Positions 26,054 to 63,790 of a stretch of 64,000 nt of DNA are shown here, piece by piece (within the stretch, counting starts at the first letter, position 1; every line of letters starts with the position of its first letter). The notes beneath the pieces were generated by a model. That model was not told where the DNA came from, ran no database searches, and saw nothing but the letters and a program-made list of their open reading frames with translations. A program made the translations under genes and the position numbers. The DNA lies in assembly GCA_047495785.1 (NCBI GenBank), contig JBLDXI010000007.1:1302001-1366000 (forward strand). Reading direction: 5' to 3'. Source of the stretch: Lepidodermella squamata. Lineage: Eukaryota > Animalia > Gastrotricha.

Positions 26054-27742
26054 CGGGCTTGAATGGATGGATGAATGAATGAAGGATCCGATGTTAATAT
26101 GCAAACCGGTTACACATTTTAATCTACATTACCTTTGATGGCGAATTAAATTATAAATTTGTTGTTTTTTATCACGATGTGTGTCCAGTTTATTATAATA
26201 CAGAGTTTTCATGCTTGGTTTCGAGGTAGTTAGGCAACACGTGACTGGGCAGACCGCTAACCTGAACATGATGCTGCCAATTTTATTAATGATGCCAACA
26301 AAAAATCAGACGAAATATCCAAAAAAGTCATTTCGTGCCGCTAAACAATAAGACTATCACGTGAGCTTATAGTCTACATGCACATTAAATTGGTAATAAT
26401 AATAATGCATCCGGTGACAGCAATCCACGGCTTAAACGGTTTCGTCGTGATATTCAACGGTTTATGGAAAGCGGTATTTTCGCATCGATGCTTTTCCTCA
26501 TCCCGAATAAATTATTACATTTCCCGATCAACGTATTTTTTTGCGCATCGATAAATTTATTCAAGCCAATTTAATTGAAAAATGCAATTTGTCCACGACG
26601 TTCCATCTCCTATATACAGATTGGCTTATATCCTTATAAAATTTTGAAACGCAATTAAAATTTGAGCTTAAAAACGTAAATGCCCAGCCCGAAGTCATCC
26701 GAAAAATAGCAAAAATCAAACAAGAGAAATAAGCAAAATTTTAGAACTCAATTTTGGTATCTCATTTTATCGAAGTATTTTTGGTAACCTGAGGTGGGAA
26801 ATCTTGCTAGATATTCAAAGATTTTGGCGTGATCAGGCTAGGGTCTCCACATGAACCTGAATCAACAAGATTTTTCTTTTCTTTTAATTTGATTTTTTTA
26901 TTTAAGGGGGACTGGAGCCTTCTGAAAATCTGAAATTTGGAATTAGAGCCTTGAATCCAAGAATGGAGCTTCTTCAAAGCCAGCGCCTTTTCGAGATATG
27001 CTGGAAATTCGCCAAGAATTCACCAAACCCTACTTTATTCTTAGTAACAGTCAAATGGTGGTTTAGTCATGCAATTATTTTTCATTATTATCATTTATTT
27101 ATTTTATTTTTTTACGAAATACCTCTTCGGTAGTTTGGCCTTGGGCATATATACGTTAATATTTTGTTTATCTCTAAATCGACCTCAATAGGCAAACAAT
27201 CATTTTTGGAAGATTATTTCATGCATTTATCGTTTGAAGGTTTCAAATCTTTTATCCAGCTTAACCTCTAAGCTGTAATATCCGCCGCAAAAAACTTGAA
27301 ATTGTTCAGAAAAGCAGATTGCCATGAAATCGGAAAATCACGTCAGATAAAAATGTAACATTGTTATACGAGTGCACGACATTGGCTTCGAAAATGGAGG
27401 CGGGTCAAAATATAAGTTTTTTTTATATTCACGAATTAAAATTTCAATTAAAGCCCTGGAAGCCGTACAAAGAGAAAATCGGATCAATGGGCACAAATGA
27501 TAAAAAATTTCGAAAAATCACTGCAGTTTCAGAACGAATATCGATATTGCAAATTTGTTGAGGTTTATTAAAATCCCTACTGCTCGATTTATTCATACAA
27601 AGGTTGCTTGAATATTTAGAACTTGGGGTGAAAAAAAAATGGAAATGACGTGTAAGGAATAATGTTTTTATCGAAAAATGATGGCTCTAACGAATACTGC
27701 ATAACTAATTAAAAGCGAGGTAAAATGAAGCCTAGTCTAAAA

Positions 27743-28756
27743 ATGAAGATTTCAGAATTATTCATCCTGTTTGCATTAGTCGAAGCTGCAAAGGCCGTAA
27801 TCGGCGCCTTTGATCCTACCAAATGCGGTTTTGGTTCAACGCTGAACAACTACCCTTATTATCCACAAGCTTTCGAAGGCAATTTCCGCCATCGAAGCGG
27901 GTTTGATTATCGAAAACAACGTAATCACGCTGCCGCGAGGATTGTCAACGGCGCAGCGGCGGCTCCAGGCGAATTTCCGTTTCAAGTCCTATTAATCGTG
28001 GAAGGTTATCATACCCAAAAGGCTATGAGATTGGCGAAACGATGCGGAGCTGCATTGATAGACCTGCACTGGGTTCTGACTGCTGAGCATTGCTTTGAAT
28101 ACATGAACCCTCTGGACAGGGTTGTGCTCGCATTCGGAGGCACTTCGATGTCACCTGGGAACTTTATGGAATTACGCGTAATGAAGCCGGGCGTTGACCT
28201 TCTTTACTTCATGCAGCCTGATTACCCCTTCAAAACCTATTCCTACGACCTTGCGCTGATAAAAATCAACCGTAACTAATTATTCCCCATTTTTTTCAGG
28301 GATTCAATTCTTATTATAGCTCCTTTGCCGAACTACTCACATCTTTTCAATCCTATTTGCTTGCCGACAATTCAATCAAGGATCTACCACGGTCAATCGT
28401 TGATGATAGCTGGCTGGGGTAAAAACGAACTGGGCGATTTTCCTAACAATCTCCAGAAAATCACGCGAACTTTGATGCCGGGCCAATTTTGCATAGATCA
28501 TCATTATCCCCAGTTCGACAGTAACATTCAATTGTGCGCGACTAATGGCACGCTGGATGGCGATTCTGGCGGTGCTTGGGCGATCATAGATCAGCCATTT
28601 GGTCCTGTTGTTGGCCGCAAATGGACCATTGTTGGCATTACTAGCTTGGCATTCCATTACAGCCTCACTGGGAGGCTGGCTGAGATTCAAGCCGGAGCTG
28701 CGATCGCTCCCGAAGTTTTAAATTGGATCAGGGACATTACCGGTACAATCTGGTAA
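27743..28756 (+). CDS. Secreted S1 (chymotrypsin-family) serine protease, copy 1; intron 28272-28319
   Basis: Signal peptide, CG pro-region, R|IVNG activation site, TAEHC, YDLAL, GDSGG. Alternative ATG at 27725. Confidence 0.85.
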
Positions 28757-31296: not shown

Positions 31297-33666
31297 ATGT
31301 CAACTTTCCAAGTGTTGGTATTAGCCACCTTCGGTGCAATTGCTCTCGCGCATCCTGATTATCAGCAACTCATTCCAAATGGAAATAAGATTCCTTCACC
31401 TTGCGATCCCGAAGAAACCTGGCAAGGCTTGGGCCATGAATACGTCATGGGAACAGGTTTATAAATCCCTAGGTGATCAGCTTTTGAAGTCTAATACTTA
31501 CCTCAAATAGGTCCCCTCAACAAATTTGGCCGAGCGTTCCTCGCAAGCAAAAAAACCTGGACCAAAAGCTTTTGCCAGGCTGATTCTGACGGCGATGGGA
31601 GAACCAACGGCGAGGAGCTAGGTGATCCCAATTGCGTGTGGACAAGGGGCGCAACGCCTGAGATAACAGACCGAAGCCAGCTATCGCACCCTGGTGTTTG
31701 TGAACCTATTGGTTCAGCCAGATGCACGGACGACTTGCGTTTTCTGCGCGACATCGATTCTTGCAAAAAGAAGTTGAACGATACAAGCGACTGGTGCCCA
31801 GCCATAAAGTCGGCTGATGTGAAAACGTTGATTCTTCGCTTCGACGAGACTACGATTCCCGCTATTGAAACCAACTACTTTTGCCAAACTTTGGAAGTCC
31901 CGGCAGATCAGGATTATCATATCATTGCAGTGAGTTTGATACCTCTAAACCCCCATTAAGAGAGCCCATGCGTCACCTTGCTGCGCAGATATTCAGGTAG
32001 ATAGCGGACTTCTTGACCAATTATGCCGCGTACTCTGATGTCAGAAGTTTTAACTTTCAAATATTGTAACGGCTTTAGCTCCAAAATCAACTTCATGAAT
32101 CCGGCAATATACGAATCTATATCCGTTCGGTAGAGAATGTCGGGACCTTGGTTTTGGAGCTAAAACCGCCACAATATTCGAAAGTAACCCTTTGACATCA
32201 GAGCGCGTGGCGTTTTGACAAGTAGTTTGAACTTTCACTTTCGCTCTTATTTTGCGCATTTTTAGGGTGGAGTTTGGAAAGATATACTTGTTTATTTGCA
32301 TCTCTTTTAATAGTGGGAGCCGATAATCGATAACCCTCAGGTCATGCATCATCTCATCCTGTTCATCTGCGACTCGCCAGCAATGGAAGCCGAGATCAAT
32401 AAGACTGGCAATTACTCAGTTCCAACCGAATGCGGAATAGAGCCTTATGAATGCAGGAACCAAAACATCGCCTGGGCTTTCGGAATTAAAGGCCGTTGCT
32501 TCCCACCTGAGGCTGGCCTGGTGATGGGCAAGAGTTCGTATCGAAAAGTTATCCTGCAGATACATTACAACAACCCTATTCTTAAATCTGGCCTGCGAGA
32601 TACCTCCGGGTTGAAAATCTACTACACCACTCAACTACGAAAGAACAGCATGACGATGATCAGACCCGGCCAAGGCGACATAGCCATCCCGCCCAACTCG
32701 AAGATGTACTCGGTTGTAACTCGGACCTTTCAGTCGACGAGTTGCAGCCAACAAACTCTGGGCGTTAATTCAACGTCTTTCAAAATCATCAGTTTGCTTA
32801 TGCATATGCATACTTTGGGAAGACGGGCTAAGCTTATCTTGGAGAAGGCGAACGGCACGAAAATCGTCGTGTTCAGTGAGCCCTACTTCTACGACAGACC
32901 AACAATCATCGATTGGCACCCGGAGGATGCTCTGGAAGTCGAGCCTGGCGATAACTTTATCCTTGAATGCATCTATTCTTCTAGTGATCGCGACAAATGG
33001 ACCTTCGTGGGCAAGAACACAGCAGATGAGATGTGTCTGGTCATGCTTGAGGTAATTTTCACGGGAATATTCGATTCGAAGTAAATTTTTCACTTTCCTC
33101 CAGGTTTTTCCACGGCCGAATGGGCGAAACTTTATTGAAGGCCATACCGCAGGCAAATCAGACCAATGTGACATGCCTCGATTGTTTAAGAAAGACGGTG
33201 GAATGTGTCTGAAATCGACTCTTAACACAATAGTCAACTCAATGCGTAACGATTCGAGATTGTTAGACGTTTGCAACGACCCGTTGACTTCAAACTCGAA
33301 GAAGTGCTGCGAGTAAGTCTTTATATATGAATATCTATATCATTTGATTATCATGTTAACATTTTCAGGTTTTTGTCCCGCAACGAGTTCTTTAACTACA
33401 CCTGCTTGTACAGTGGCTCATTCGAACTAGTTAAGCGGCTACTTGATAACAGCACGAACTCGCAAACGATCAATAACGTTCATGCTAATATCGCGAAGTG
33501 CATCAACTCGGATATTATTGGCTCGGAATATAAGAGTGCTGCCGACGAAGATAGCCATGAGGAGGATGATAGTGTCGAGGCTGGCCACGCCAACGCTCTG
33601 GCTCTTAAATCATCTGGCAGTTCAGATCAACGTATTGTCCCGGCTATTAGTAATTCTCACGATTGA
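31297..33666 (+). CDS. Temptin-domain + copper type II ascorbate-dependent monooxygenase (DBH/TBH/MOXD1-like), 5 exons
   Basis: Exons 31297-31456, 31511-31929, 32314-33051, 33104-33312, 33369-33666; temptin motifs IPNG, GLGH, NKFG, DSDGDGRTNGEELGDPNCVW, SHPG; Cu ligands MHH, IHY, HMH, EMC; TATA tatataaa near 31243. Confidence 0.85.
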
Positions 33667-34702: not shown

Positions 34703-37700
34703 CTAAGAACTCGTCCTCTCATCTATCAGTGACTCACTTGTCGACGGGTTGTAGCTTGTTCCCGACGAACATTCGAACGGTCGGCAGAAGCGTTCATCCG
34801 ACTCGTCGCCGCAATCGTCAATGCCGTTACAAATAGCTCGGAGACCTATGCATCGGCCGGTATTGCAACGGCGTTGACTGAACTGGTCACACCAGTTGTT
34901 GCCTCTTGGTCGCGATCCTCCCTGCCCAGGACAAGGTTTGCGAATGTCGACACAAGTATTGGTAGTGTTACACTTGTACATTCCGGAATCGCATGGACGG
35001 TAAACGCAGCCCTCTTCGTCAGACCCGTCGTCGCAATCGGGAGTTCCGTCACACATACTGTCGGACCAAATGCATTTGCCATCAGAGCACTTGAAGCTTG
35101 AAACAAAATTGACAAATTAAACGTATTACCTACAACTGATTCTAATTTTACAAGGAACAAAGAAATTCAAATTATATTCAAATATGATCAACTGACTGAA
35201 AAAATGGAAAATGAATTAGATAACAACCAGTTGTCACAGCATGGTCGATTACTGCAGCGTTGCTCATCGCTTCTGTCGGGGCAGTTGTTACTGCCGTCGC
35301 AGAACTTGTCTCCTAAAATGCAACGCCCATCACCTTGACAAGACTGCCCGCTCGGTCCGCAACCCAGACAGCGCCTCTCGTCGGTTCCATCGCCGCATTG
35401 ATCTACGCCATCGCACGCCCAGTCGCGGTAAATACAGCGCCCATTGTCGCACTTCGAACTAAACAGAAACAGATGAAATACGATTCGTTGAAAAGCCTTC
35501 TCACCAAATCTCGCAACAAGTCAGGTTGTTGCCCTGTCGACAGTTCGTCTCATCGTCAGCATCAGGACAATCGACTTTCTTATCGCAAACCTTCTGTCCG
35601 TCAATGCATTCGCCGGAAATAGGACATTTCCATTGATAATTAGCACAGCCAGTAAATCTGGGCGGCGAGATTGTTGTGGTTGATGAAGGTTCCGGGGTAT
35701 TGCGAGAGCCACATGACGACATGTCCATTAGCCAATTCATATCACTCTGGCAAATGGCAACTGCCGTCATTTCGACCGCTGCACTCGGCCATCCAGTGGT
35801 TCTCGGACACAAAAACTGAACAACTGAACCGACTTTGTTGCCATTCGACACTCTACCAACGGTGAAATTGCCGATTTGACTCAATGGTCGACATTCCGGT
35901 TGCGATTCTAACTTGACTCTGGCTTCATCAGTCTGTTTAACAAAAGCTGCGTGTTCATTGAGCGTGGAAGTTGCCAAGGCTGAATCGCCACCTGAGGCAA
36001 GGTAGTCGAAAATACACTGACGGGAAGTTCCACAAACTGCCCGTGCTTCTGCTGGAGCCGATTCGGGCCGAGCGTCGAAGTAAACAGGCTTGAAGTCTGG
36101 AAAGCGCATTGATTGAAACGACTGCCCTGAAGAATAACTGAATAGGCTCTGTTCGGGTGATCGGATCAACCATTTCATCATTTGATCATGAATTTGTTCA
36201 GCTGGTGAATTCGAAGCTAGAGTTGATCCATCCGGGCCAGTTAGATCATCGGCCAGGTTGTCATTGAAGTTCCCGTAAAGACCTGCAAACTTACCCTTGA
36301 AAACATCGCTAACTGCCGGTATCATTGTCAGCGTGCTAAAAGCTTTTTTGACAACGAGACTCATCGCCCTAGTAGCGATGGTGACGATGTGCCTATCAGG
36401 TGTAGCTGTCAGCGAGAATCCTGGCATACTAACCTGCAATGCGCTGTTCGACACCGCATTTGTTACTATTGATGTGCCGTTGATCAAAATATCCAGCCCA
36501 TTTTTCGTGGGATGTTGCTGAATTTGTATCCTTGTCGGTGAAGTGGAGCTCGGAATCTTGACAACCATCGCTGTCAGGTAGCTGGCTTGCCCCGATCCAG
36601 TCAAACGACCTTGAACAATTGGAAGCGACTTATTGACACCCTGCTTAGGTACGATCATGTTGAACTCCCCTCTCCCGTTGAATACGTAATACAGGCCGTC
36701 AAATGTGTTGAAATGAGGATCTCCAAAAACTGTTGCGGATTTCGGATCCGGACAAAGAGCGCATGCTACTTGGCAAGCGATAGCCGTGATGGGATTTAGA
36801 ATGGCGCATACAATTGGACAGAGAGCACAGAGGCATCGTTTTTGAGAACCAACATCGTAGAAATTGAAAAGATAATCTCTCGTTTCAGTGAATAGAGCGC
36901 CACTGGTCGTTTGCATCATCAAAATCCAATCGCTCATCGGCAAGCCGCAAACATCGGGCGAACTTTGAGTGTAACAATTGGAATGGCTGTCCAAGGCAGC
37001 TTGTTTCACTTGTTTGCATGACAGATTCGGGTCCAGCAGTGGCGTTGCAGCTTGTTGGAGACAGAGCCTTACGCTGTCAACCCATTGCTTACCGTCGTCG
37101 CTGAAAGAATCGTAATTTTCAGCATATTTGTTACAAAACCGCAACGCATAGGCCCTCGCATAGTCGTCTTCGCCACCACGGCAGGAAGGATGAGCCGGTT
37201 CAAGGCAGGTTTCATACCAAGAGCAGTCAATTCCTGTCGGTCGATTGCAGTTTGTTGCTTGGCGTTTTTGCCGACTCGGGTAACGATTTCTGTACGGGTT
37301 GCAAGCTTCTTCCGAGCAGATTGAAACTGATGGAGGATCCTGAGAATCTCCATCAACTGTTGCGAATCTGCAAGAACCTTTTCCGCAGAAAATTGGCCGG
37401 CTTAGCATTAAACCAATATCATTTCTTGCCAGAAGGCTCTCAACGTCCACTCCTGACCTGCCACTCCTGTAGCCAATGACCATCAGAAGCATTCCACCAA
37501 GTTCACCAGCATTGAAAGCTGGATTTGCTTTCAAATAGTACTTTTTCGACAACCTATCATTCGGAACAGCCCGAGCTAAATCTGTTAGAACGCTCCATGA
37601 ACTTGATGTGTCGCTCAAATAGATCAGGCTGACGTCGATTAGAGCCGAAGTGTCTCGAAAAGATTGGTTTGACCACTCCACTCGAAGAGCTACAATGGGC

Positions 37701-38872
37701 GAGTTGAGCTCACCGTTTCGAGCCACAAATTTGGCAGCAATTGTTGAAGATTCTTCATTATAGACTGTTTCGACAAATCCATTAAATATTGTCCCGTTCA
37801 AGCCTAGAGACAAGTTGACAGATATCCTTCCAATATCATGAAGAACCGGAACTTGGCATCGAACTGTAGGGACGCCTGCCAGCATGACGGCAGTTCCATT
37901 TACTCGGCGTGGGCCGCGCAGACTGTCCTGGAAGATGCACTGGGCAACTTCCGAATTAATGTCGAATAAAGGACCAGTTACATTGATTTCACTCCCTCCA
38001 AAAATGCTGACTCTTCTTGGACTAATCGAAACTGAATTCATTTGAGCAACGATCGAATTTGCTGTATCGGTTCTGAAGATCCACTTTCCTGGCTGGAAGA
38101 CGTTTGAAGAAGCTTCGGCTCCTCGAATTGTTCCAGTGCACGATCCCGGTACGGCGTAGAATGTCTTCCCATCGCCAGCATCAAATCCGATTTTAGCCGG
38201 CTTTCCGCTCAAACCCGTACAATACTCGCCACCACTTGCTGTACCTGTTGTCCAGGTAATTTTTTCAAAATTGAAAATAGCAAACATGCTGTTTCCGCCA
38301 TCTGTTGCTATAACTGCTTGAAATGTGTTTCGTGGGATTAAGGGACTGGAAGCGTTGTTGTTGAACATTCCGCAATTACCTGCTCCGTAATAAGTCACAT
38401 TCCACCACGTTACTATGAACAAAGCCATTGATTTGAAACTGGTCCCGTTGGATAGGCCAGCTGAATTGATTTCTCGATCAGCTTTTGCCAGCAGCCTACT
38501 CTCATTTGTCAGTCGATAGTAAACATTACCACCAAGATATCTGGTATCGACATCGGCCCAGAAAGGAGCAATCATTCGAATGCCAGCCCCATTGGCTTGA
38601 CAAAGAGGCGTGTAAGCCGAAATGCCAGCGTCGAAAGAGATGGCTCCGTTGACGTTGACGTAGAATCGGCCCTCCTTCCTGCCCAAGAATGGAAACAGCG
38701 GAGTGACATTGATGGCAGCTGATGAACTGTCATCGCCGCTTTCTAATAAGCGATCGCCATTGGTGTTACCGAAAGGAAAGAATTCACTAATTGAAACCCC
38801 AGCGGTAACGTTCGATATCCCAAATAACAGAAGTAGAAGACCACTACCGACCTGTATCGCTGCTACAAGCAT
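34703..38872 (-). CDS. Secreted NIDO + IPT-like + stanniocalcin-like + VWD + Sushi + LDLa repeat protein (SUSD2/mesh/MUC4-like), 3 exons
   Basis: NIDO ([26 protein letters not shown]), [17 protein letters not shown] module, ~5-6 LDLa repeats; exons ~38872-35505, ~35458-35228, ~35094-34703; no TM segment seen. Confidence 0.85.
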
Positions 38873-42382: not shown

Positions 42383-43383
42383 ATGAAGGCTCAAAAACTC
42401 TTCTCCCTGTTCACGTTAGTCGAATTTGCGAAGGCCGCAATCGATGCCTTCGATCCAGCAAAATGCGGCTTTGGTTCAACGCTGGACAACTACGATTATC
42501 CTCATGACTTCGGTGGCAATTCTAGCCGGTTTGGGAAGTATTATCGAAAGCAACGTAACCACGCTGCAGCGAGGATTGTCAACGGCGCAGACGCAGTGCC
42601 AGGACAATTTCCGTACCAAGTCCTTTTCCTACTTGAAGGTTATAACACGAAAACGGCAGAGGAAGTGAGGAGACGATGCGGAGCTGCATTGATAGATTTG
42701 CACTGGGTTCTGACCGCTGAGCATTGCTTTGACGACTTGAACCCTCTAGACAAGGTTGTGCTCTTGTTCGGAGGCACTAAAGTAAAACCTGGGAATTTTG
42801 CGCAGCGACGTAGGATGAGGCCAGGTATCAATCTTGTTTACTTCAAGCAGCCTGATTACCCCTTGAAAACCCATTCCTACGACCTGGCACTGGTAAAAAT
42901 CATTCGTAAGTATAACCGTCTTCCCTATTTCCATGGAATTCATTCTCATTTTTAGCTCCTTTGCCGTACTACGATAATCTTTTCAATCCGATTTGCCTGC
43001 CGACGAGCCCGCCAAGGCTCCACACCGGAGTGGTGATAGCTGGTTGGGGTAAAAATGAACTCGGCCGCTATTCTAATGTTCTTAAAAAGATATCGCGAAC
43101 TTTGCTGCCCGGGCAAACATGCATTGATTTTCATTACCCGGAATTTGACAGTAATGTTGAAGTATGCGCGACAAGTGGATCGCTGAACGGCGATTCTGGG
43201 GGTGCGTGGGCTGCCGCTGATGAGCCGTTTGGAGCTGTTGTTGGCCGGAAATGGACGGTTTTTGGCATTACCAGCTCGGTATTCCGTTACAGCCTCACTG
43301 GGCGGCTTACTGAAATTCAAGGCGGGGCTGCGATCACTCCCGAAGTTATCAATTGGATCAGGGACATTACCAGTAGATTTTGA
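42383..43383 (+). CDS. Secreted S1 serine protease, copy 2; intron 42906-42955
   Basis: R|IVNG, TAEHC, YDLAL, GDSGG; intron at the same position as in copy 1. Confidence 0.85.
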
Positions 43384-60300: not shown

Positions 60301-60996
60301 TCAGCTCTGCTTCGAAGTCGAGGCACGAAAAGGCTGAGTTGCAGTAAGCCACGCGAAGCCGGCTGGCAAGGTCCATTGAGCCCTGTTACGCGATGGTGAT
60401 AAAGCCGGCATCTGCCACGTTGATGCCGATGATGGTCCTACGAAATTCGTCCACTGAAACAAGCCAGGCGAGGGCGATGGCGTAATCCATTGACCAGCCG
60501 AAGGGGTTGCAAAAGTTTCTAACCAAGGCTTAGGAGCTGGAGTTTTGGTGTCGAATTCAGGCTGAGCCTGGCTGATGTAGTACTGCTTTATCGACGAGAG
60601 AACAGAATCTCCCCAGGTCGACCAAACCGCGCCCCAACGGGCCACATCTGGTGGAGACATTGTTCCCCATGAAACGTCTCTGAATCCTAACCAAGAATAA
60701 GGAGCAGTAGCAACTTCAGTGTTCCAGATAGATCGATAATTTGCTATCCAGGAAGCTATAGGATCCACACTGTTGGCTGGAGTCGTCAGTGAATTTTCCT
60801 TCACCCCAGTTATCACGGCCCATGGATTAGATGAGAATTGCGAATTCGAGGCCTGAGAAACTAAACCATACGACCCACTATTCCAGCTAGTTGGTCTGAA
60901 GGTCCAGTTATCTTGACCTGATTGTTCGCCGTTCAGAGTGCTCTGAGGCTCAACGCTCGCAACTAAAACAGCCGCGACAATGACGAAAAATAACAT
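60301..60996 (-). CDS. Secreted Trp/Ser/Pro-rich protein of unknown function
   Basis: Signal peptide MLFFVIVAAVLVASV; 231-aa open frame, many Trp, no Cys. Confidence 0.65.
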   Translation of the reverse strand: MLFFVIVAAVLVASVEPQSTLNGEQSGQDNWTFRPTSWNSGSYGLVSQASNSQFSSNPWAVITGVKENSLTTPANSVDPIASWIANYRSIWNTEVATAPYSWLGFRDVSWGTMSPPDVARWGAVWSTWGDSVLSSIKQYYISQAQPEFDTKTPAPKPWLETFATPSAGQWITPSPSPGLFQWTNFVGPSSASTWQMPALSPSRNRAQWTLPAGFAWLTATQPFRASTSKQS

Positions 60997-61612: not shown

Positions 61613-61620
61613 TATAAATA
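61613..61620 (+). promoter_or_regulatory. TATA box of the Gly/Tyr precursor gene
   Basis: tataaata followed ~25 nt later by an Inr-like tcagt, ~110 nt before the ATG. Confidence 0.55.
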
Positions 61621-61724
61621 CGCCGAACTGCACCGTGCTAAATCAGTCAACTGACTCGAGCACATTCTAACCCTAAAACATCCGAGTCTCATTTTTACCA
61701 ACTCCTACTGCTCAAGATCTCATT

Positions 61725-63221
61725 ATGAAGCTCGCTATTTTCGCCGTTTTAGTAGCGGCGTCGCTTTGCGCCGCTGACAAGTCGCACCACAAGCGCCAAA
61801 TCTTCCCCGGCTACGGCGGTATTGGCTATGGCGGTCTAGGCTATGGCTACGGCGGTTTCGGCGGCTACCCGGGTTATGGTATCGGCTACGGCGCTGGTTT
61901 CTACGGCCGCAAACGTCGCGATACTGAAGATGTCGAAAGCCACGAAGAGCACAAGGAGAAGCGTCAAATCTTCCCTGGCTACGGCGCCGTTGGCTATGGC
62001 GGCCTTGGCTATGGTGGTTACGGCTACGGTTACCCGGGCGTCGTTGGCGTCGGCTACCCAGCTGTCGGTGGTTTCTACGGCCGCAAGCGTCGTGATGTCG
62101 ATGACGTGTCCGAACACATCAAGGAGAAGCGCCAGATCGGTCTCGGCTACCCAGGCTACGGCTACGGTGGTTTCGGCTATGGCGGCCTTGGTTACGGCGG
62201 TCTCGGCTACGGCGCTGTGAATACTGGTTTTGGATACCCTGCCATCTACGGCCGCAAACGCCGCGATACTGATGACGTCGAATCGCACAAGGACAAGCGC
62301 CAGGTTCTGCTCGGCGGTGTTGGCTACCCTGGTTTCGGCTACGGCGGTCTCGGCTACGTTGGTCTTGGCTACGGCTACGGCGCTGTTAACACCGGTTTCG
62401 GCTACCCGGCTATCTATGGCCGCAAGCGTCGCGATACCGATGACGTCGAACACCACGAACATGATGAGCATCACAAGGAAAAGCGTCAAATTCTGGGTAT
62501 TTATTCCCGATTTTACACGAATTTATTTTTATTTTCAATTATTTCAGCCGGTGGATTTGTTGGTGCTCCAATCGGCTATGGTTACGGCTACCCTGGCTAC
62601 GGTGTCGGTCTCGGCTACGGCGCCGTTAACACTGGCTTCGGCTACCCTGCTATCTACGGCCGCAAGCGTCGCGATGCTGAAGACCACGATCCTAAGGAAC
62701 ACAAGGAGAAGCGTCAAATCTTGGGTAAGGATTTATTGGAGCTCGAAAATCCTCAAAGATTCTTCAATCTATTTTCTAAATTTCAGCCGGTGGTTTCGTT
62801 GGTGCTGCCCCCATTGTCGGAGGTGTCGGCTACGGCTACGGCTATCCTGGCTTCGGTCTCGGCTACGGCGCTGTCAACACCGGTTTTGGCTACCCGGCTA
62901 TCTATGGCCGCAAACGCCGCGACACTGAGGACGTCGAACCCCACGATCCCAAGGACCACAAGGAAAAGCGTCAGATCATTGGTAATTTTTATTTCAAAAT
63001 TTATTAAAATAATTTCAAATTTAAATTATTTTAAATTTTAAATTCTAATTTTAATTTTAACAGCCGCTGGATACGCGCCCTTTGTCGGTGCCCCTCTCAT
63101 TGGTGCTGCCCCTATTCTCGGAGCTCCCCTTGTAGGCCCTGCCTTCGTTGGCGGCCCTGTTGTCGGTGGTCCATTCATTGGCGGTTACGGCTACGGCGTC
63201 GGCCCTGGTGTCCTGCTGTAA
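61725..63221 (+). CDS. Polyprotein precursor of seven Gly/Tyr-rich peptides (exons 61725-62496, 62548-62724, 62787-62981, 63064-63221)
   Basis: Signal peptide; repeated KR|Q...YG|RKRR units separated by D/E/H-rich spacers; three phase-1 introns with GT...cag ends give one continuous frame. Confidence 0.85.
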
Positions 63222-63464
63222 ATAATAGCGAAATAATAGCTACTTCAACCGCTGAATATTGTTGACTTGCAGTATAATGATAATTTAAACTATATAATTA
63301 GCTGCTCTGCTTCGAGTTTTATATCATGATTCGTACCTTCACTTGGTTTTATAATTCCTGATTCGGGTCAGTTTGATTCCTTTCTTACAAAGTAGCTCCA
63401 TCAAGATTTGTGAAAACTGTTCGGAATTTAGCAATTTAACACTAATAAACTGCGAACTTTTTGC

Positions 63465-63790
63465 TACGTCTGACTGTTGATACCAGGTTAAGGGGACCCC
63501 TATTTGAAAATTAAATAAAATTACCGAAAAATTCAGAAATTAATTAAAGCTAGCGGAAAGGTGGCTTGTTAATTTTTTGTAAATTATCACAATTTTCCTG
63601 ATTTTCATCAATTTAAAATACTTTGGAAGTATTATCACCGGCTTCGGATCCAGCTACGTACATTTGACTGTTGATACCTGGTTAAGAGGATCTATGAATG
63701 AAAATATTAAAACTTACGAAAAAAATTTCGAAATTAAGCGAAGCTAGTGGAAAGGCAGATTCTTATTTTCTTGTAAATTATGATAATTTC
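63465..63790. repeat. Degenerate tandem duplication (~190-bp period)
   Basis: tgactgttgatacc(a/t)ggttaag ... aagctag(c/t)ggaaagg ... ttgtaaattat occurs twice. Confidence 0.55.

What the first reader, a model, noticed from the sequence alone, without database searches (positions are those of the whole stretch)
61725..63221. Seven-unit precursor of long pyroGlu, Tyr-amidated Gly/Tyr peptides with His/acidic spacers
Seen: each unit is KR|Q-(Gly/Tyr/Pro-rich, ~35-45 aa)-YG|RKRR, separated by spacers such as DTDDVEHHEHDEHHKE; the last peptide is aliphatic and not amidated. Known: Q after a dibasic site gives pyroglutamate, G-R/K gives an amide, and C. elegans NLP-29/caenacin antimicrobial peptides are YGG-rich with similar ends; Gly/Tyr-rich sequences also build sclerotised or adhesive materials. 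Inference: either a multi-copy antimicrobial peptide or a self-assembling structural/adhesive peptide kept soluble by pH- or metal-sensitive His/acidic spacers until convertase cleavage.
Basis: partly seen in the sequence, partly recalled or inferred. Interest (0 to 1): 0.8.

Follow-up and report, generated by a model that had tools for sequence, protein, structure and literature searches.

The report
Multi-copy uncharged Gly/Tyr peptide precursor
A small freshwater animal (most likely the gastrotrich Lepidodermella squamata) has a real four-exon gene for a secreted protein that looks built to be cut into six completely uncharged glycine/tyrosine peptides plus a greasy tail peptide. The family has not been described, and its job (building material, defence or signal) is still open.

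Summary
Window 61725-63221 (+) is a clean 4-exon gene for a 433-aa secreted polyprotein. It has a signal peptide, six units of KR|Q-(36-43 aa Gly/Tyr/Pro-rich)-G|RKRR-acidic/His spacer, and a final aliphatic Gly/Pro/Val peptide with no amidation signal.

It belongs to a four-gene family in this genome. A clear relative occurs in two environmental samples. Across 23 units:
- RKRR is invariant.
- Gly precedes RKRR in 22 of 23 units.
- Gln starts the peptide in 21 of 23.
- None of the 971 peptide residues is D, E, K or R.

The nearest paralog gives dN/dS 0.16. The genome encodes proprotein convertases, a bifunctional PAM and glutaminyl cyclase. An exhaustive protein search found no characterised relative.

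C. elegans NLP-29/caenacins match only in composition: they are basic and lack internal dibasic sites. His-rich spacers and a Tyr-amide end are specific to this gene pair, not to the family.

My best reading is that the prohormone machinery removes every charge and releases self-associating peptides for an extracellular material. Defence or signalling roles are not excluded. I obtained no RNA reads and no evidence of actual cleavage.

This scan already noted related Gly/Tyr polyproteins elsewhere in this genome (s1-384431, s1-374017).

The parts
61613..61619 (+). TATA box (TATAAAT), 112 nt upstream of the ATG
   Evidence: Sequence read directly. The paralog promoters are not alignable beyond a TATA-like element.
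61643..61647 (+). Initiator-like TCAGT about 30 nt downstream of the TATA box; the likely transcription start (inferred)
   Evidence: No RNA data.
61725..62496 (+). Exon 1: signal peptide, pro-piece, units 1-4 and the first three residues of unit 5
   Evidence: The donor is G|GTATTT.
61725..61796 (+). Signal peptide (MKLAIFAVLVAASLCA) and short pro-piece ending HHKR
   Evidence: The signal peptide was judged by eye; no predictor was run.
61797..61964 (+). Unit 1: Q...FYG | RKRR | DTEDVESHEEHKEKR
61965..62132 (+). Unit 2: Q...FYG | RKRR | DVDDVSEHIKEKR
62133..62300 (+). Unit 3: Q...GAVNTGFGYPAIYG | RKRR | DTDDVESHKDKR
   Evidence: The C-terminal 14-mer is identical in the environmental relative.
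62301..62486 (+). Unit 4: Q...GAVNTGFGYPAIYG | RKRR | DTDDVEHHEHDEHHKEKR
62497..62547 (+). Intron 1 (51 nt, GT..AG, phase 1, 22% GC)
62487..62714 (+). Unit 5 (spans intron 1): Q...AIYG | RKRR | DAEDHDPKEHKEKR
62548..62724 (+). Exon 2 (177 nt, symmetric phase 1-1)
62725..62786 (+). Intron 2 (62 nt, GT..AG, phase 1)
62715..62971 (+). Unit 6 (spans intron 2): Q...AIYG | RKRR | DTEDVEPHDPKDHKEKR
62787..62981 (+). Exon 3 (195 nt, symmetric phase 1-1)
62982..63063 (+). Intron 3 (82 nt, GT..AG, phase 1, 7% GC)
62972..63218 (+). Unit 7 (spans intron 3): 55-aa aliphatic Gly/Pro/Val/Ala/Leu peptide ending LL, with no Gly-basic amidation signal
   Evidence: No Pfam match.
63064..63221 (+). Exon 4, including the TAA stop
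63444..63449 (+). First AATAAA after the stop codon; candidate polyadenylation signal (inferred)

Best explanation
This is a real gene for a secreted polyprotein that matures through the prohormone-type pathway. The steps below are inferred from sequence; no cleavage has been observed.
1. The signal peptide is removed.
2. Furin/PC-type convertases cut after every RKRR and every K-x-KR.
3. A carboxypeptidase trims the basic residues.
4. PAM converts each exposed C-terminal Gly into an amide.
5. The N-terminal Gln cyclises to pyroglutamate.

The products would be six 36-43-aa Gly/Tyr/Pro-rich peptides with no ionisable group except Tyr-OH, one 55-aa aliphatic elastin-like tail peptide, and six short acidic (here also His-rich) spacer peptides.

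My most likely functional reading is as follows. The charged spacers keep the precursor soluble inside the cell. Their excision releases sticky, aromatic-rich GGLGY-type peptides. These self-associate, and may be Tyr-cross-linked, into an extracellular material such as cuticle or scales, egg envelope or adhesive. On this reading they are not classical cationic antimicrobial peptides or receptor ligands.
For: The gene is real. The 4-exon model is clean and the introns are AT-rich. dN/dS is 0.156 (dS 0.195) against the paralog at C7:994 kb. There are four intact family genes in the genome plus one decayed fragment.

A relative, P0001/P0068, occurs as intron-free, mRNA-like contigs in two environmental samples. 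The two contigs start within 3 nt of each other, and an AATAAA lies near the 3' end.

The processing signals are conserved. In 23 units from 5 proteins, RKRR is found in 23 of 23, Gly before it in 22 of 23, and N-terminal Gln in 21 of 23 (His in the other two). The spacers end in (K/N/I)-(E/D/N)-K-(R/K). The rest of each spacer varies freely in sequence and in length, from 10 to 33 aa. One paralog even ends ...GLIGR-stop, so its last peptide keeps a Gly-basic signal.

The machinery is present in the genome: at least 10 convertase P-domain loci, a bifunctional PHM+PAL gene and glutaminyl cyclase.

Evidence for the material-like reading:
- 0 of 971 peptide residues is D, E, K or R, while the spacers are 62% D/E/K/R.
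- The peptides are 21-31% aromatic and 33-47% Gly.
- There are 11 GG[LIVFY]GY motifs.
- The relative P0001 passes Pfam's Lamprin threshold through its GGLGY repeats (63.8 bits against a cut-off of 34).
- AlphaFold2 finds no fold (mean pLDDT 38.7).
- Codon use is extreme: 105 of 110 Gly codons are GGC/GGT and 37 of 47 Tyr codons are TAC, against mixed usage in neighbouring genes. Together with the TATA promoter, this suggests bulk expression.
Against: There is no RNA, peptide or localisation evidence for this gene.

Cleavage, amidation and pyroGlu formation are inferred, not observed.

The 14 C-terminal residues GAVNTGFGYPAIYG are identical between species while the rest of the protein is about 50-78% identical. 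That degree of conservation looks more like a specific recognition motif, as in a ligand, than like a bulk material.

The Pfam Lamprin and Chorion matches of the window protein itself are below threshold (13.1 and 16.2 bits) and reflect a low-complexity motif, not homology.

Nothing is known about the molecular composition of gastrotrich cuticle, eggshell or adhesive, so there is no target structure to match.
Confidence: 0.45

Rival explanations
1. Secreted defence peptides. On this reading the polyprotein is a multi-copy precursor of Gly/aromatic-rich antimicrobial or antifungal peptides. It would be functionally analogous to nematode glycine-rich secreted peptides (NLP-29/CNC), which are released into the surface matrix.
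For: Gly/Tyr-rich secreted peptides starting with Gln are the hallmark of C. elegans NLP/CNC epidermal AMPs. [quoted passage not shown] Multi-copy precursors and multigene families are typical of invertebrate AMPs. The nearest non-gastrotrich match with the same in-register layout is an uncharacterised nematode protein from Pristionchus mayeri (BLASTP 2e-16). Blocked ends protect secreted peptides from exopeptidases.
Against: The peptides carry no charge at all, whereas NLP/CNC peptides are described as basic and lack internal dibasic sites. dN/dS is 0.16, and an invariant C-terminal motif is kept across species; that is not the diversifying pattern usual for AMP families. No homology to any tested AMP was found in 1.84 billion representatives.
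Confidence: 0.25
2. Signalling peptides. On this reading this is a multi-copy amidated neuro-, endocrine or pheromone peptide precursor whose active part is the conserved C-terminal ...GAVNTGFGYPAIY-amide.
For: The layout is a classical prohormone one: dibasic sites, a Gly amide donor, N-terminal Gln and variable acidic spacers. The C-terminal 14-mer is identical in four of the six units here and in the relative from another species. PAM, QC and convertases are present.
Against: The peptides are long (36-53 aa), low in complexity and variable in length by whole GGLGY units, even between alleles. Units 1-2 and the C13 paralogs lack the motif and end in FY, FI, LV or AY before Gly. One unit has Thr instead of Gly. 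The strong codon bias and the TATA promoter suggest bulk rather than neuronal expression. There is no match to any known neuropeptide family.
Confidence: 0.12
3. An intact matrix protein. On this reading the protein is not cleaved and works like lamprin or elastin: hydrophobic Gly/Tyr domains alternate with charged Lys/His/Asp linkers that serve for solubility or for cross-linking.
For: The alternation of hydrophobic GGLGY-type domains and charged linkers, plus a Gly/Pro/Val tail, resembles lamprin and elastin designs. This rests on the Pfam Lamprin hit of the relative and on my own knowledge of those proteins. His and Lys are typical partners for quinone cross-links.
Against: It does not explain why exactly RKRR and K-x-KR are invariant while everything between them drifts. 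It also does not explain why Gly always precedes RKRR and Gln always follows KR, or why the spacers lose His in the paralogs and the relative. Furin-type sites this good are rarely left uncut in secreted proteins (general knowledge).
Confidence: 0.1
4. Not a functional gene: a chance ORF in a GC-rich repeat, or a decaying pseudogene.
For: The sequence is low in complexity, and long ORFs also appear in other frames and on the opposite strand. I obtained no RNA evidence for this locus.
Against: The gene has a signal peptide, three canonical in-phase introns, purifying selection against a paralog, conserved processing sites in four genes, and a transcribed relative in another species.
Confidence: 0.02

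Closest known systems
C. elegans NLP-29-type and caenacin (CNC) peptides, i.e. nematode glycine-rich secreted peptides (GRSP)
   Same: They are secreted, rich in Gly and aromatic residues, and have Gln at the mature N-terminus. They form multigene families, and NLP-29 is delivered to the surface matrix (PMC11993903; PMC10506718).
   Different: NLP/CNC peptides are basic, come from single-peptide preproteins of about 200 aa or less, have a QWGYG motif right after the signal peptide and have no internal dibasic sites. Here there is a 433-aa seven-unit polyprotein, charge-free peptides, tetrabasic and dibasic sites and acidic spacers. No sequence relationship to any C. elegans protein was detected.
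GGLGY-repeat structural proteins: lamprin (Pfam PF06403) and silkmoth chorion (PF01723)
   Same: Both have tandem GG(L/F/Y)GY pentapeptides in a Gly/Tyr-rich, fold-less, self-associating sequence. The environmental relative passes the Lamprin threshold.
   Different: The window protein scores below both thresholds. Lamprin and chorion proteins are not polyproteins cut at convertase sites and have no pGlu or amide signals. The similarity is a low-complexity motif, not shown homology.
Multi-copy secreted peptide precursors processed by convertases (prohormones; insect multipeptide AMP precursors such as apidaecin, cited from my own knowledge)
   Same: Both have a signal peptide, repeated peptide units, basic cleavage sites, acidic spacers and Gly as the amide donor. 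The processing enzymes are encoded in the genome.
   Different: The peptides are several times longer than usual neuropeptides, low in complexity, entirely uncharged and variable in length.
Uncharacterised Pristionchus proteins (e.g. P. mayeri GMR46156.1)
   Same: The layout is in register: signal peptide..HQKR|Q, a roughly 45-aa uncharged Gly/Tyr/Pro/Ser peptide, G|KR or G|RKKR, a short acidic/His spacer, then KR|Q again.
   Different: They have only two units, more Ser and Ala, and weaker basic sites. The family is tiny and unstudied. Common descent cannot be separated from convergence.
The 708-aa Gly/Tyr polyprotein of the same genome (scan finding s1-384431, C13:3188-3190 kb)
   Same: It has uncharged Gly/Tyr/Pro peptides bounded by KKR and RKRR in a secreted polyprotein. 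My own-genome search picked it up.
   Different: Its peptides start with Ser and mostly end ...VIL before RKRR, without the Gly donor. Most of its length consists of about 27 acidic RERREI-type peptides.

Membership tests
C. elegans NLP/CNC (caenacin) antimicrobial peptides | The mature peptide is basic | tested here: not met
   0 of 971 peptide residues is K, R, D or E across 23 units. The definition is taken from PMC11993903.
C. elegans NLP/CNC (caenacin) antimicrobial peptides | A QWGYG motif lies directly after the signal-peptide cleavage site, with no internal dibasic processing sites | tested here: not met
   The first peptide starts QIFPGYG after an HHKR pro-piece, and the protein has 6 RKRR and 7 KR sites.
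C. elegans NLP/CNC (caenacin) antimicrobial peptides | Detectable sequence relationship to C. elegans members | tested here: not met
   No C. elegans protein appeared among the hits at E<=1e-3, either in the word-indexed search or in the exhaustive phmmer search. The only nematode hits were uncharacterised Pristionchus and C. auriculariae proteins.
Nematode GRSP class as operationally defined in PMC10506718 | Signal peptide and mature Gly content of 17-74% | tested here: met
   There is an N-terminal hydrophobic leader (judged by eye). Gly is 110 of 433 residues overall and 33-47% within the peptides.
Nematode GRSP class as operationally defined in PMC10506718 | Length of 200 aa or less, and a C. 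elegans GRSP among the top BLAST hits | tested here: not met
   The protein is 433 aa and there are no C. elegans hits.
Pfam Lamprin (PF06403) | Score above the gathering cut-off (34 bits) | tested here: not met
   Exon-1 protein scores 13.1 bits and the C7:994 kb paralog 16 bits. The relative P0001 scores 63.8 bits through its GGLGY repeats.
Pfam Chorion_1 (PF01723) | Score above the gathering cut-off (22.3 bits) | tested here: not met
   16.2 bits.
Convertase-processed, amidated multi-copy peptide precursors (a kind, not a homologous family) | Signal peptide; repeated peptides flanked by conserved di- or tetrabasic sites; Gly before the C-terminal site | tested here: met
Convertase-processed, amidated multi-copy peptide precursors (a kind, not a homologous family) | Processing enzymes encoded by the organism | tested here: met
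   Convertase P-domains at 10 loci. PHM+PAL gene at C20:2.594 Mb. Glutaminyl cyclase at C54:4.029 Mb.
Convertase-processed, amidated multi-copy peptide precursors (a kind, not a homologous family) | The peptides actually exist in processed, pGlu/amide form | not testable with these tools
   This needs peptidomics. The predicted masses are given.

The most novel reading that the evidence does not exclude
The prohormone machinery (convertase, carboxypeptidase, PAM, glutaminyl cyclase) is used here to manufacture a building material rather than signals. The precursor is designed so that maturation removes every single charge. It would release fully neutral Gly/Tyr peptides that condense, and perhaps become Tyr-cross-linked, into the gastrotrich's cuticular scales, egg envelope or adhesive. 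That would be a peptide-based extracellular biomaterial, with analogous but unstudied precursors in Pristionchus nematodes and marine crustaceans.
Probability: 0.3. Interest if true: 0.75.

Novelty: new variant of a known kind. Interest (0 to 1): 0.5.

Why it matters
Nothing is known at the molecular level about what gastrotrich cuticle, scales, eggshell or adhesive are made of, nor about gastrotrich immunity. This small family gives a concrete candidate that is easy to test, because the predicted masses are exact and the C-terminal epitope is conserved.

The design is unusual: every charge is stripped from long, aromatic-rich peptides by the machinery normally used for hormones. If confirmed, it would be a new route to peptide-based materials. 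It would also bear on how aggregation-prone low-complexity sequences are kept soluble until export.

The finding also shows that the popular 'NLP-29-like AMP' label for any secreted Gly/Tyr peptide does not fit here.

Tried and rejected
- **Organism identity by COX1.** There was no hit; the mitochondrial genome is apparently not in the assembly. The identity therefore rests on matching assembly statistics with PMC11660948 and on other agents' notes.
- **Metagenome scan.** A scan with the conserved motifs GAVNTGFG and YP[AV]IYGRK gave 235 pattern matches, none confirmed.
- **Structure.** AlphaFold2 on exon 1 gave no confident structure, so I did no fold search.
- **ESM Atlas.** It returned only weak arthropod cuticle-like neighbours (0.81 or less), which is below the level at which shuffled sequences also score.
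- **Pfam.** Lamprin and Chorion were below threshold, and there was no match for the last exon.
- **Nematode lead.** The Pristionchus family turned out to be tiny and unnamed.
- **Literature.** Searches for GGLGY, rotifer or gastrotrich Gly/Tyr proteins, gastrotrich cuticle and neuropeptides, and Tyr-rich pGlu/amidated polyproteins found no description of such a family.
- **Other ORFs.** I rejected the alternative-frame and opposite-strand ORFs at 61836-62489, 61843-62220 and 62230-62928 as by-products of the GC-rich repeat.
- **Bacterial promoter/terminator scan.** This is irrelevant for a eukaryote.
- **DBH-like copper monooxygenases.** These are expanded in the genome, but they are DBH-type rather than PHM-type, and I could not link them to this gene.
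- **Spliced model.** Exon 1 was searched by reference. The other exons were covered only by the own-genome search and by Pfam. The joined model was used only inside scripts for translation, unit counting and dN/dS.
Full report
**Observation.** The plain ORF from 61725 runs through the first intron and then goes out of frame. With three short GT..AG introns removed, the reading frame is continuous from the ATG at 61725 to the TAA at 63219-63221 (433 codons). The introns lie at 62497-62547, 62725-62786 and 62982-63063, are 51, 62 and 82 nt long and have 22, 31 and 7% GC, against 60% in the CDS.

All three introns are phase 1 and sit after the third residue (QIL/QII) of units 5, 6 and 7. Exons 2 and 3 (177 and 195 nt) are therefore symmetric cassettes, each carrying 'rest of peptide - RKRR - spacer - KR - QIL'. 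A TATAAAT box lies 112 nt upstream of the ATG, with a TCAGT initiator-like motif 30 nt after it. The first AATAAA follows the stop by about 220 nt.

The product is:
- a hydrophobic leader and a short pro-piece ending HHKR;
- six units of the form Q-(Gly/Tyr/Pro/Val/Leu/Phe-rich)-YG-RKRR-(acidic, His-containing spacer)-K-x-KR;
- a 55-residue Gly/Pro/Val/Ala/Leu peptide that ends LL-stop.

**Organism.** The window is contig C7:1,302,001-1,366,000 of a 121.2-Mb, 151-contig assembly. GC is about 43% along the window. The genes are animal genes: NIDO-VWD, a class C GPCR, SOCS box and trypsins. The published Lepidodermella squamata assembly is 122 Mb in 157 contigs with 43% GC (PMC11660948). Other agents of this scan reached the same identification. 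I could not confirm it with a marker gene, because COX1 was not found in the assembly. I therefore treat 'gastrotrich, probably L. squamata' as likely but not proven.

**Family.** A six-frame search of the genome with exon 1 found three further intact genes of the same design and one decayed fragment:
- C7:994 kb(-): 433 aa, seven units, 97% identical over the shared units. It has two extra N-terminal units, no aliphatic tail, and ends RKRR-HAN-stop.
- C13:3636 kb(-): 248 aa, with three RKRR-ended units plus a tail peptide.
- C13:3809 kb(+): 337 aa, with four RKRR-ended units plus a last peptide ending GLIGR-stop.
- C13:3633 kb: the decayed fragment.

A degenerate DNA pattern for G-RKRR-D/E clusters only at these loci. 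A more distant relative is the 708-aa polyprotein at C13:3188-3190 kb, already reported by this scan (s1-384431).

Outside the genome, the word-indexed search and an exhaustive phmmer search of 1.84 billion cluster representatives gave one strong hit. This is P0001 (E 4e-58), with its near-identical allele P0068, from two JGI samples. These 942-983-nt contigs hold the whole ORF without introns and start within 3 nt of each other. One ends shortly after AATAAA. They differ by three substitutions and one 15-nt GGLGY unit. They look like assembled mRNAs of a related species. That is the only indirect expression evidence I have. A scan of metagenome contigs found nothing further.

**Conservation.** I split five proteins into units. 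In 23 RKRR-terminated units:
- RKRR is invariant.
- The residue before RKRR is Gly in 22 (Thr once).
- The residue before that is Tyr, Ile, Val or Leu.
- The first peptide residue is Gln in 21 and His in 2.
- The residue after RKRR is Asp or Glu in 21.
- The spacers end KEKR, KDKR, NDKR, KNKR, IDKR or KDKK.

Between these anchors the spacers vary from 10 to 33 residues and share little sequence. The His-rich spacers are confined to the two C7 genes. The C13 genes and P0001 use Asp/Glu/Thr/Ser/Pro instead.

The peptides (35-53 aa) are 44% Gly and 18% Tyr and contain not one Asp, Glu, Lys or Arg in 971 residues, whereas the spacers are 62% charged. Between species the peptides are well conserved (78% over two units) and the C-terminal GAVNTGFGYPAIYG-RKRR is identical, while the spacers are not alignable. 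Against the C7:994 kb paralog, dS is 0.195 and dN 0.031, a ratio of 0.156 over 284 codons. This is a gene under purifying selection, with selection concentrated on the peptides and the cleavage, amidation and cyclisation signals.

**Machinery.** The genome has at least ten proprotein-convertase P-domain loci. It has a gene at C20:2.594 Mb whose pieces match the PHM domain (E 1e-19) and the PAL domain (E 4e-44) of rat/human PAM. It also has a glutaminyl cyclase at C54:4.029 Mb (E 9e-27 to solved QCs). The inferred maturation is therefore feasible in this animal, but nothing shows that it happens to this protein.

**What it most likely does.** The striking feature is that maturation would erase all charge. 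The spacers and basic residues are cut away, the new N-terminus is cyclised and the new C-terminus is amidated. What remains are 36-43-aa peptides whose only polar groups are Tyr hydroxyls and one Asn-Thr pair.

Several observations fit a self-associating material:
- The peptides carry 11 GG[LIVFY]GY motifs.
- The same pentapeptide lets the relative P0001 pass Pfam's Lamprin threshold (63.8 bits), although the window protein itself does not (13.1 bits).
- From general knowledge, GGLGY repeats in lamprin and chorion, and Gly/Tyr low-complexity segments in general, promote self-association.
- AlphaFold2 predicts no fold (pLDDT 38.7).
- Codon use is extreme compared with neighbouring genes (95% GGC/GGT, 79% TAC), and the promoter has a canonical TATA box. 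Both are typical of bulk-expressed secretory products (inference).

I therefore favour a self-assembling extracellular material whose charged spacers act as built-in solubilisers until convertase cleavage.

I hold this loosely (0.45 for the whole statement; about 0.8 for 'processed secreted multi-peptide precursor'). The invariant C-terminal motif is more specific than a bulk material needs, and there are no expression data.

**Rivals.**
- Defence peptides: the composition, the N-terminal Gln and secretion into the surface matrix parallel C. elegans NLP-29. But those peptides are basic, unprocessed single products, whereas these are neutral and slowly evolving.
- Signalling peptides: the layout and the conserved amide end fit. 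The length, the low complexity, the repeat-number polymorphism, the motif's absence from half the units and the codon bias do not.
- An uncleaved lamprin/elastin-like protein: this does not explain the anchor conservation.
- A non-gene is effectively excluded.

**Comparison and novelty.** No characterised family contains this protein. The remaining weak hits are low-complexity resemblances. Some share the design idea:
- Pristionchus proteins with an in-register KR|Q...G|KR layout. They are unnamed and form a tiny family.
- Marine metatranscriptome and krill proteins with GLGY peptides between KR and Glu/Asp-Ala/Pro spacers.

Literature searches found no description of such precursors, nor any molecular data on gastrotrich cuticle, adhesive or peptides. 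I class it as a new variant of a known kind: a convertase-processed multi-copy secreted peptide precursor that is compositionally close to nematode glycine-rich secreted peptides.

**Limits.** No reads could be laid on the locus. Signal-peptide cleavage was judged by eye. Exon 1 was searched by reference, and the joined model was used only inside scripts.

Noticed in passing
window 32344-33084 (+); G000 C13:1.99-2.36 Mb: The genome holds at least 39 hits to the copper type II monooxygenase domain, most in a dense array on contig 13 and one inside this window. The ones I checked are DBH-like rather than PHM-like (the best PDB match is dopamine beta-hydroxylase). This is a large, unexplained expansion.
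   Followed up: partly
window 63465-63595 and 63659-63789: There is a tandem duplication of a roughly 194-nt AT-rich non-coding element in the 3' flank of the gene, with about 80% identity between the copies.
   Followed up: no
window 60301-60996 (-): The divergently oriented neighbour encodes a 231-aa secreted Trp/Ser/Pro/Thr-rich protein with no Pfam match. Its ATG lies about 730 nt from the ATG of the polyprotein gene.
   Followed up: no
G000 C13:3191.6 kb and C13:3193.6 kb (L026, L038, L039): Two M28 metallopeptidase genes, by eye carboxypeptidase-Q-like with a PA domain, sit directly beside the related 708-aa Gly/Tyr polyprotein gene. A possible functional link was not examined.
   Followed up: no
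P0051, P0050, P0062, P0024, P0044 (marine metatranscriptomes; Meganyctiphanes norvegica): These secreted multi-copy precursors have GLGY-rich peptides ending Gly-Lys-Arg. The peptides are separated by Glu/Asp-Ala/Pro spacers of the kind trimmed by dipeptidyl aminopeptidases. This is an analogous and apparently unstudied design in crustacean-like sequences.
   Followed up: partly
P0057 (Caenorhabditis auriculariae CAD6193568.1): A 661-aa polyprotein has about 15 copies of TIGLAPVVA.PAVGYQPAVIG-RKKR units. It looks like a large multi-copy amidated peptide precursor.
   Followed up: no
L001 vs L044 (JGI samples 3300036412 and 3300036809): The environmental relative occurs as two alleles that differ by exactly one GGLGY pentapeptide (a 15-nt indel). 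Repeat number is therefore polymorphic in nature.
   Followed up: yes
window 27725-28279 (+), 42383-42955 (+), 35501-38872 (-): These positions hold two trypsin-like protease gene fragments and a 1123-aa single-exon NIDO-VWD-C8-LDLa mucin-4-like gene. The window is rich in secreted-protein genes.
   Followed up: no
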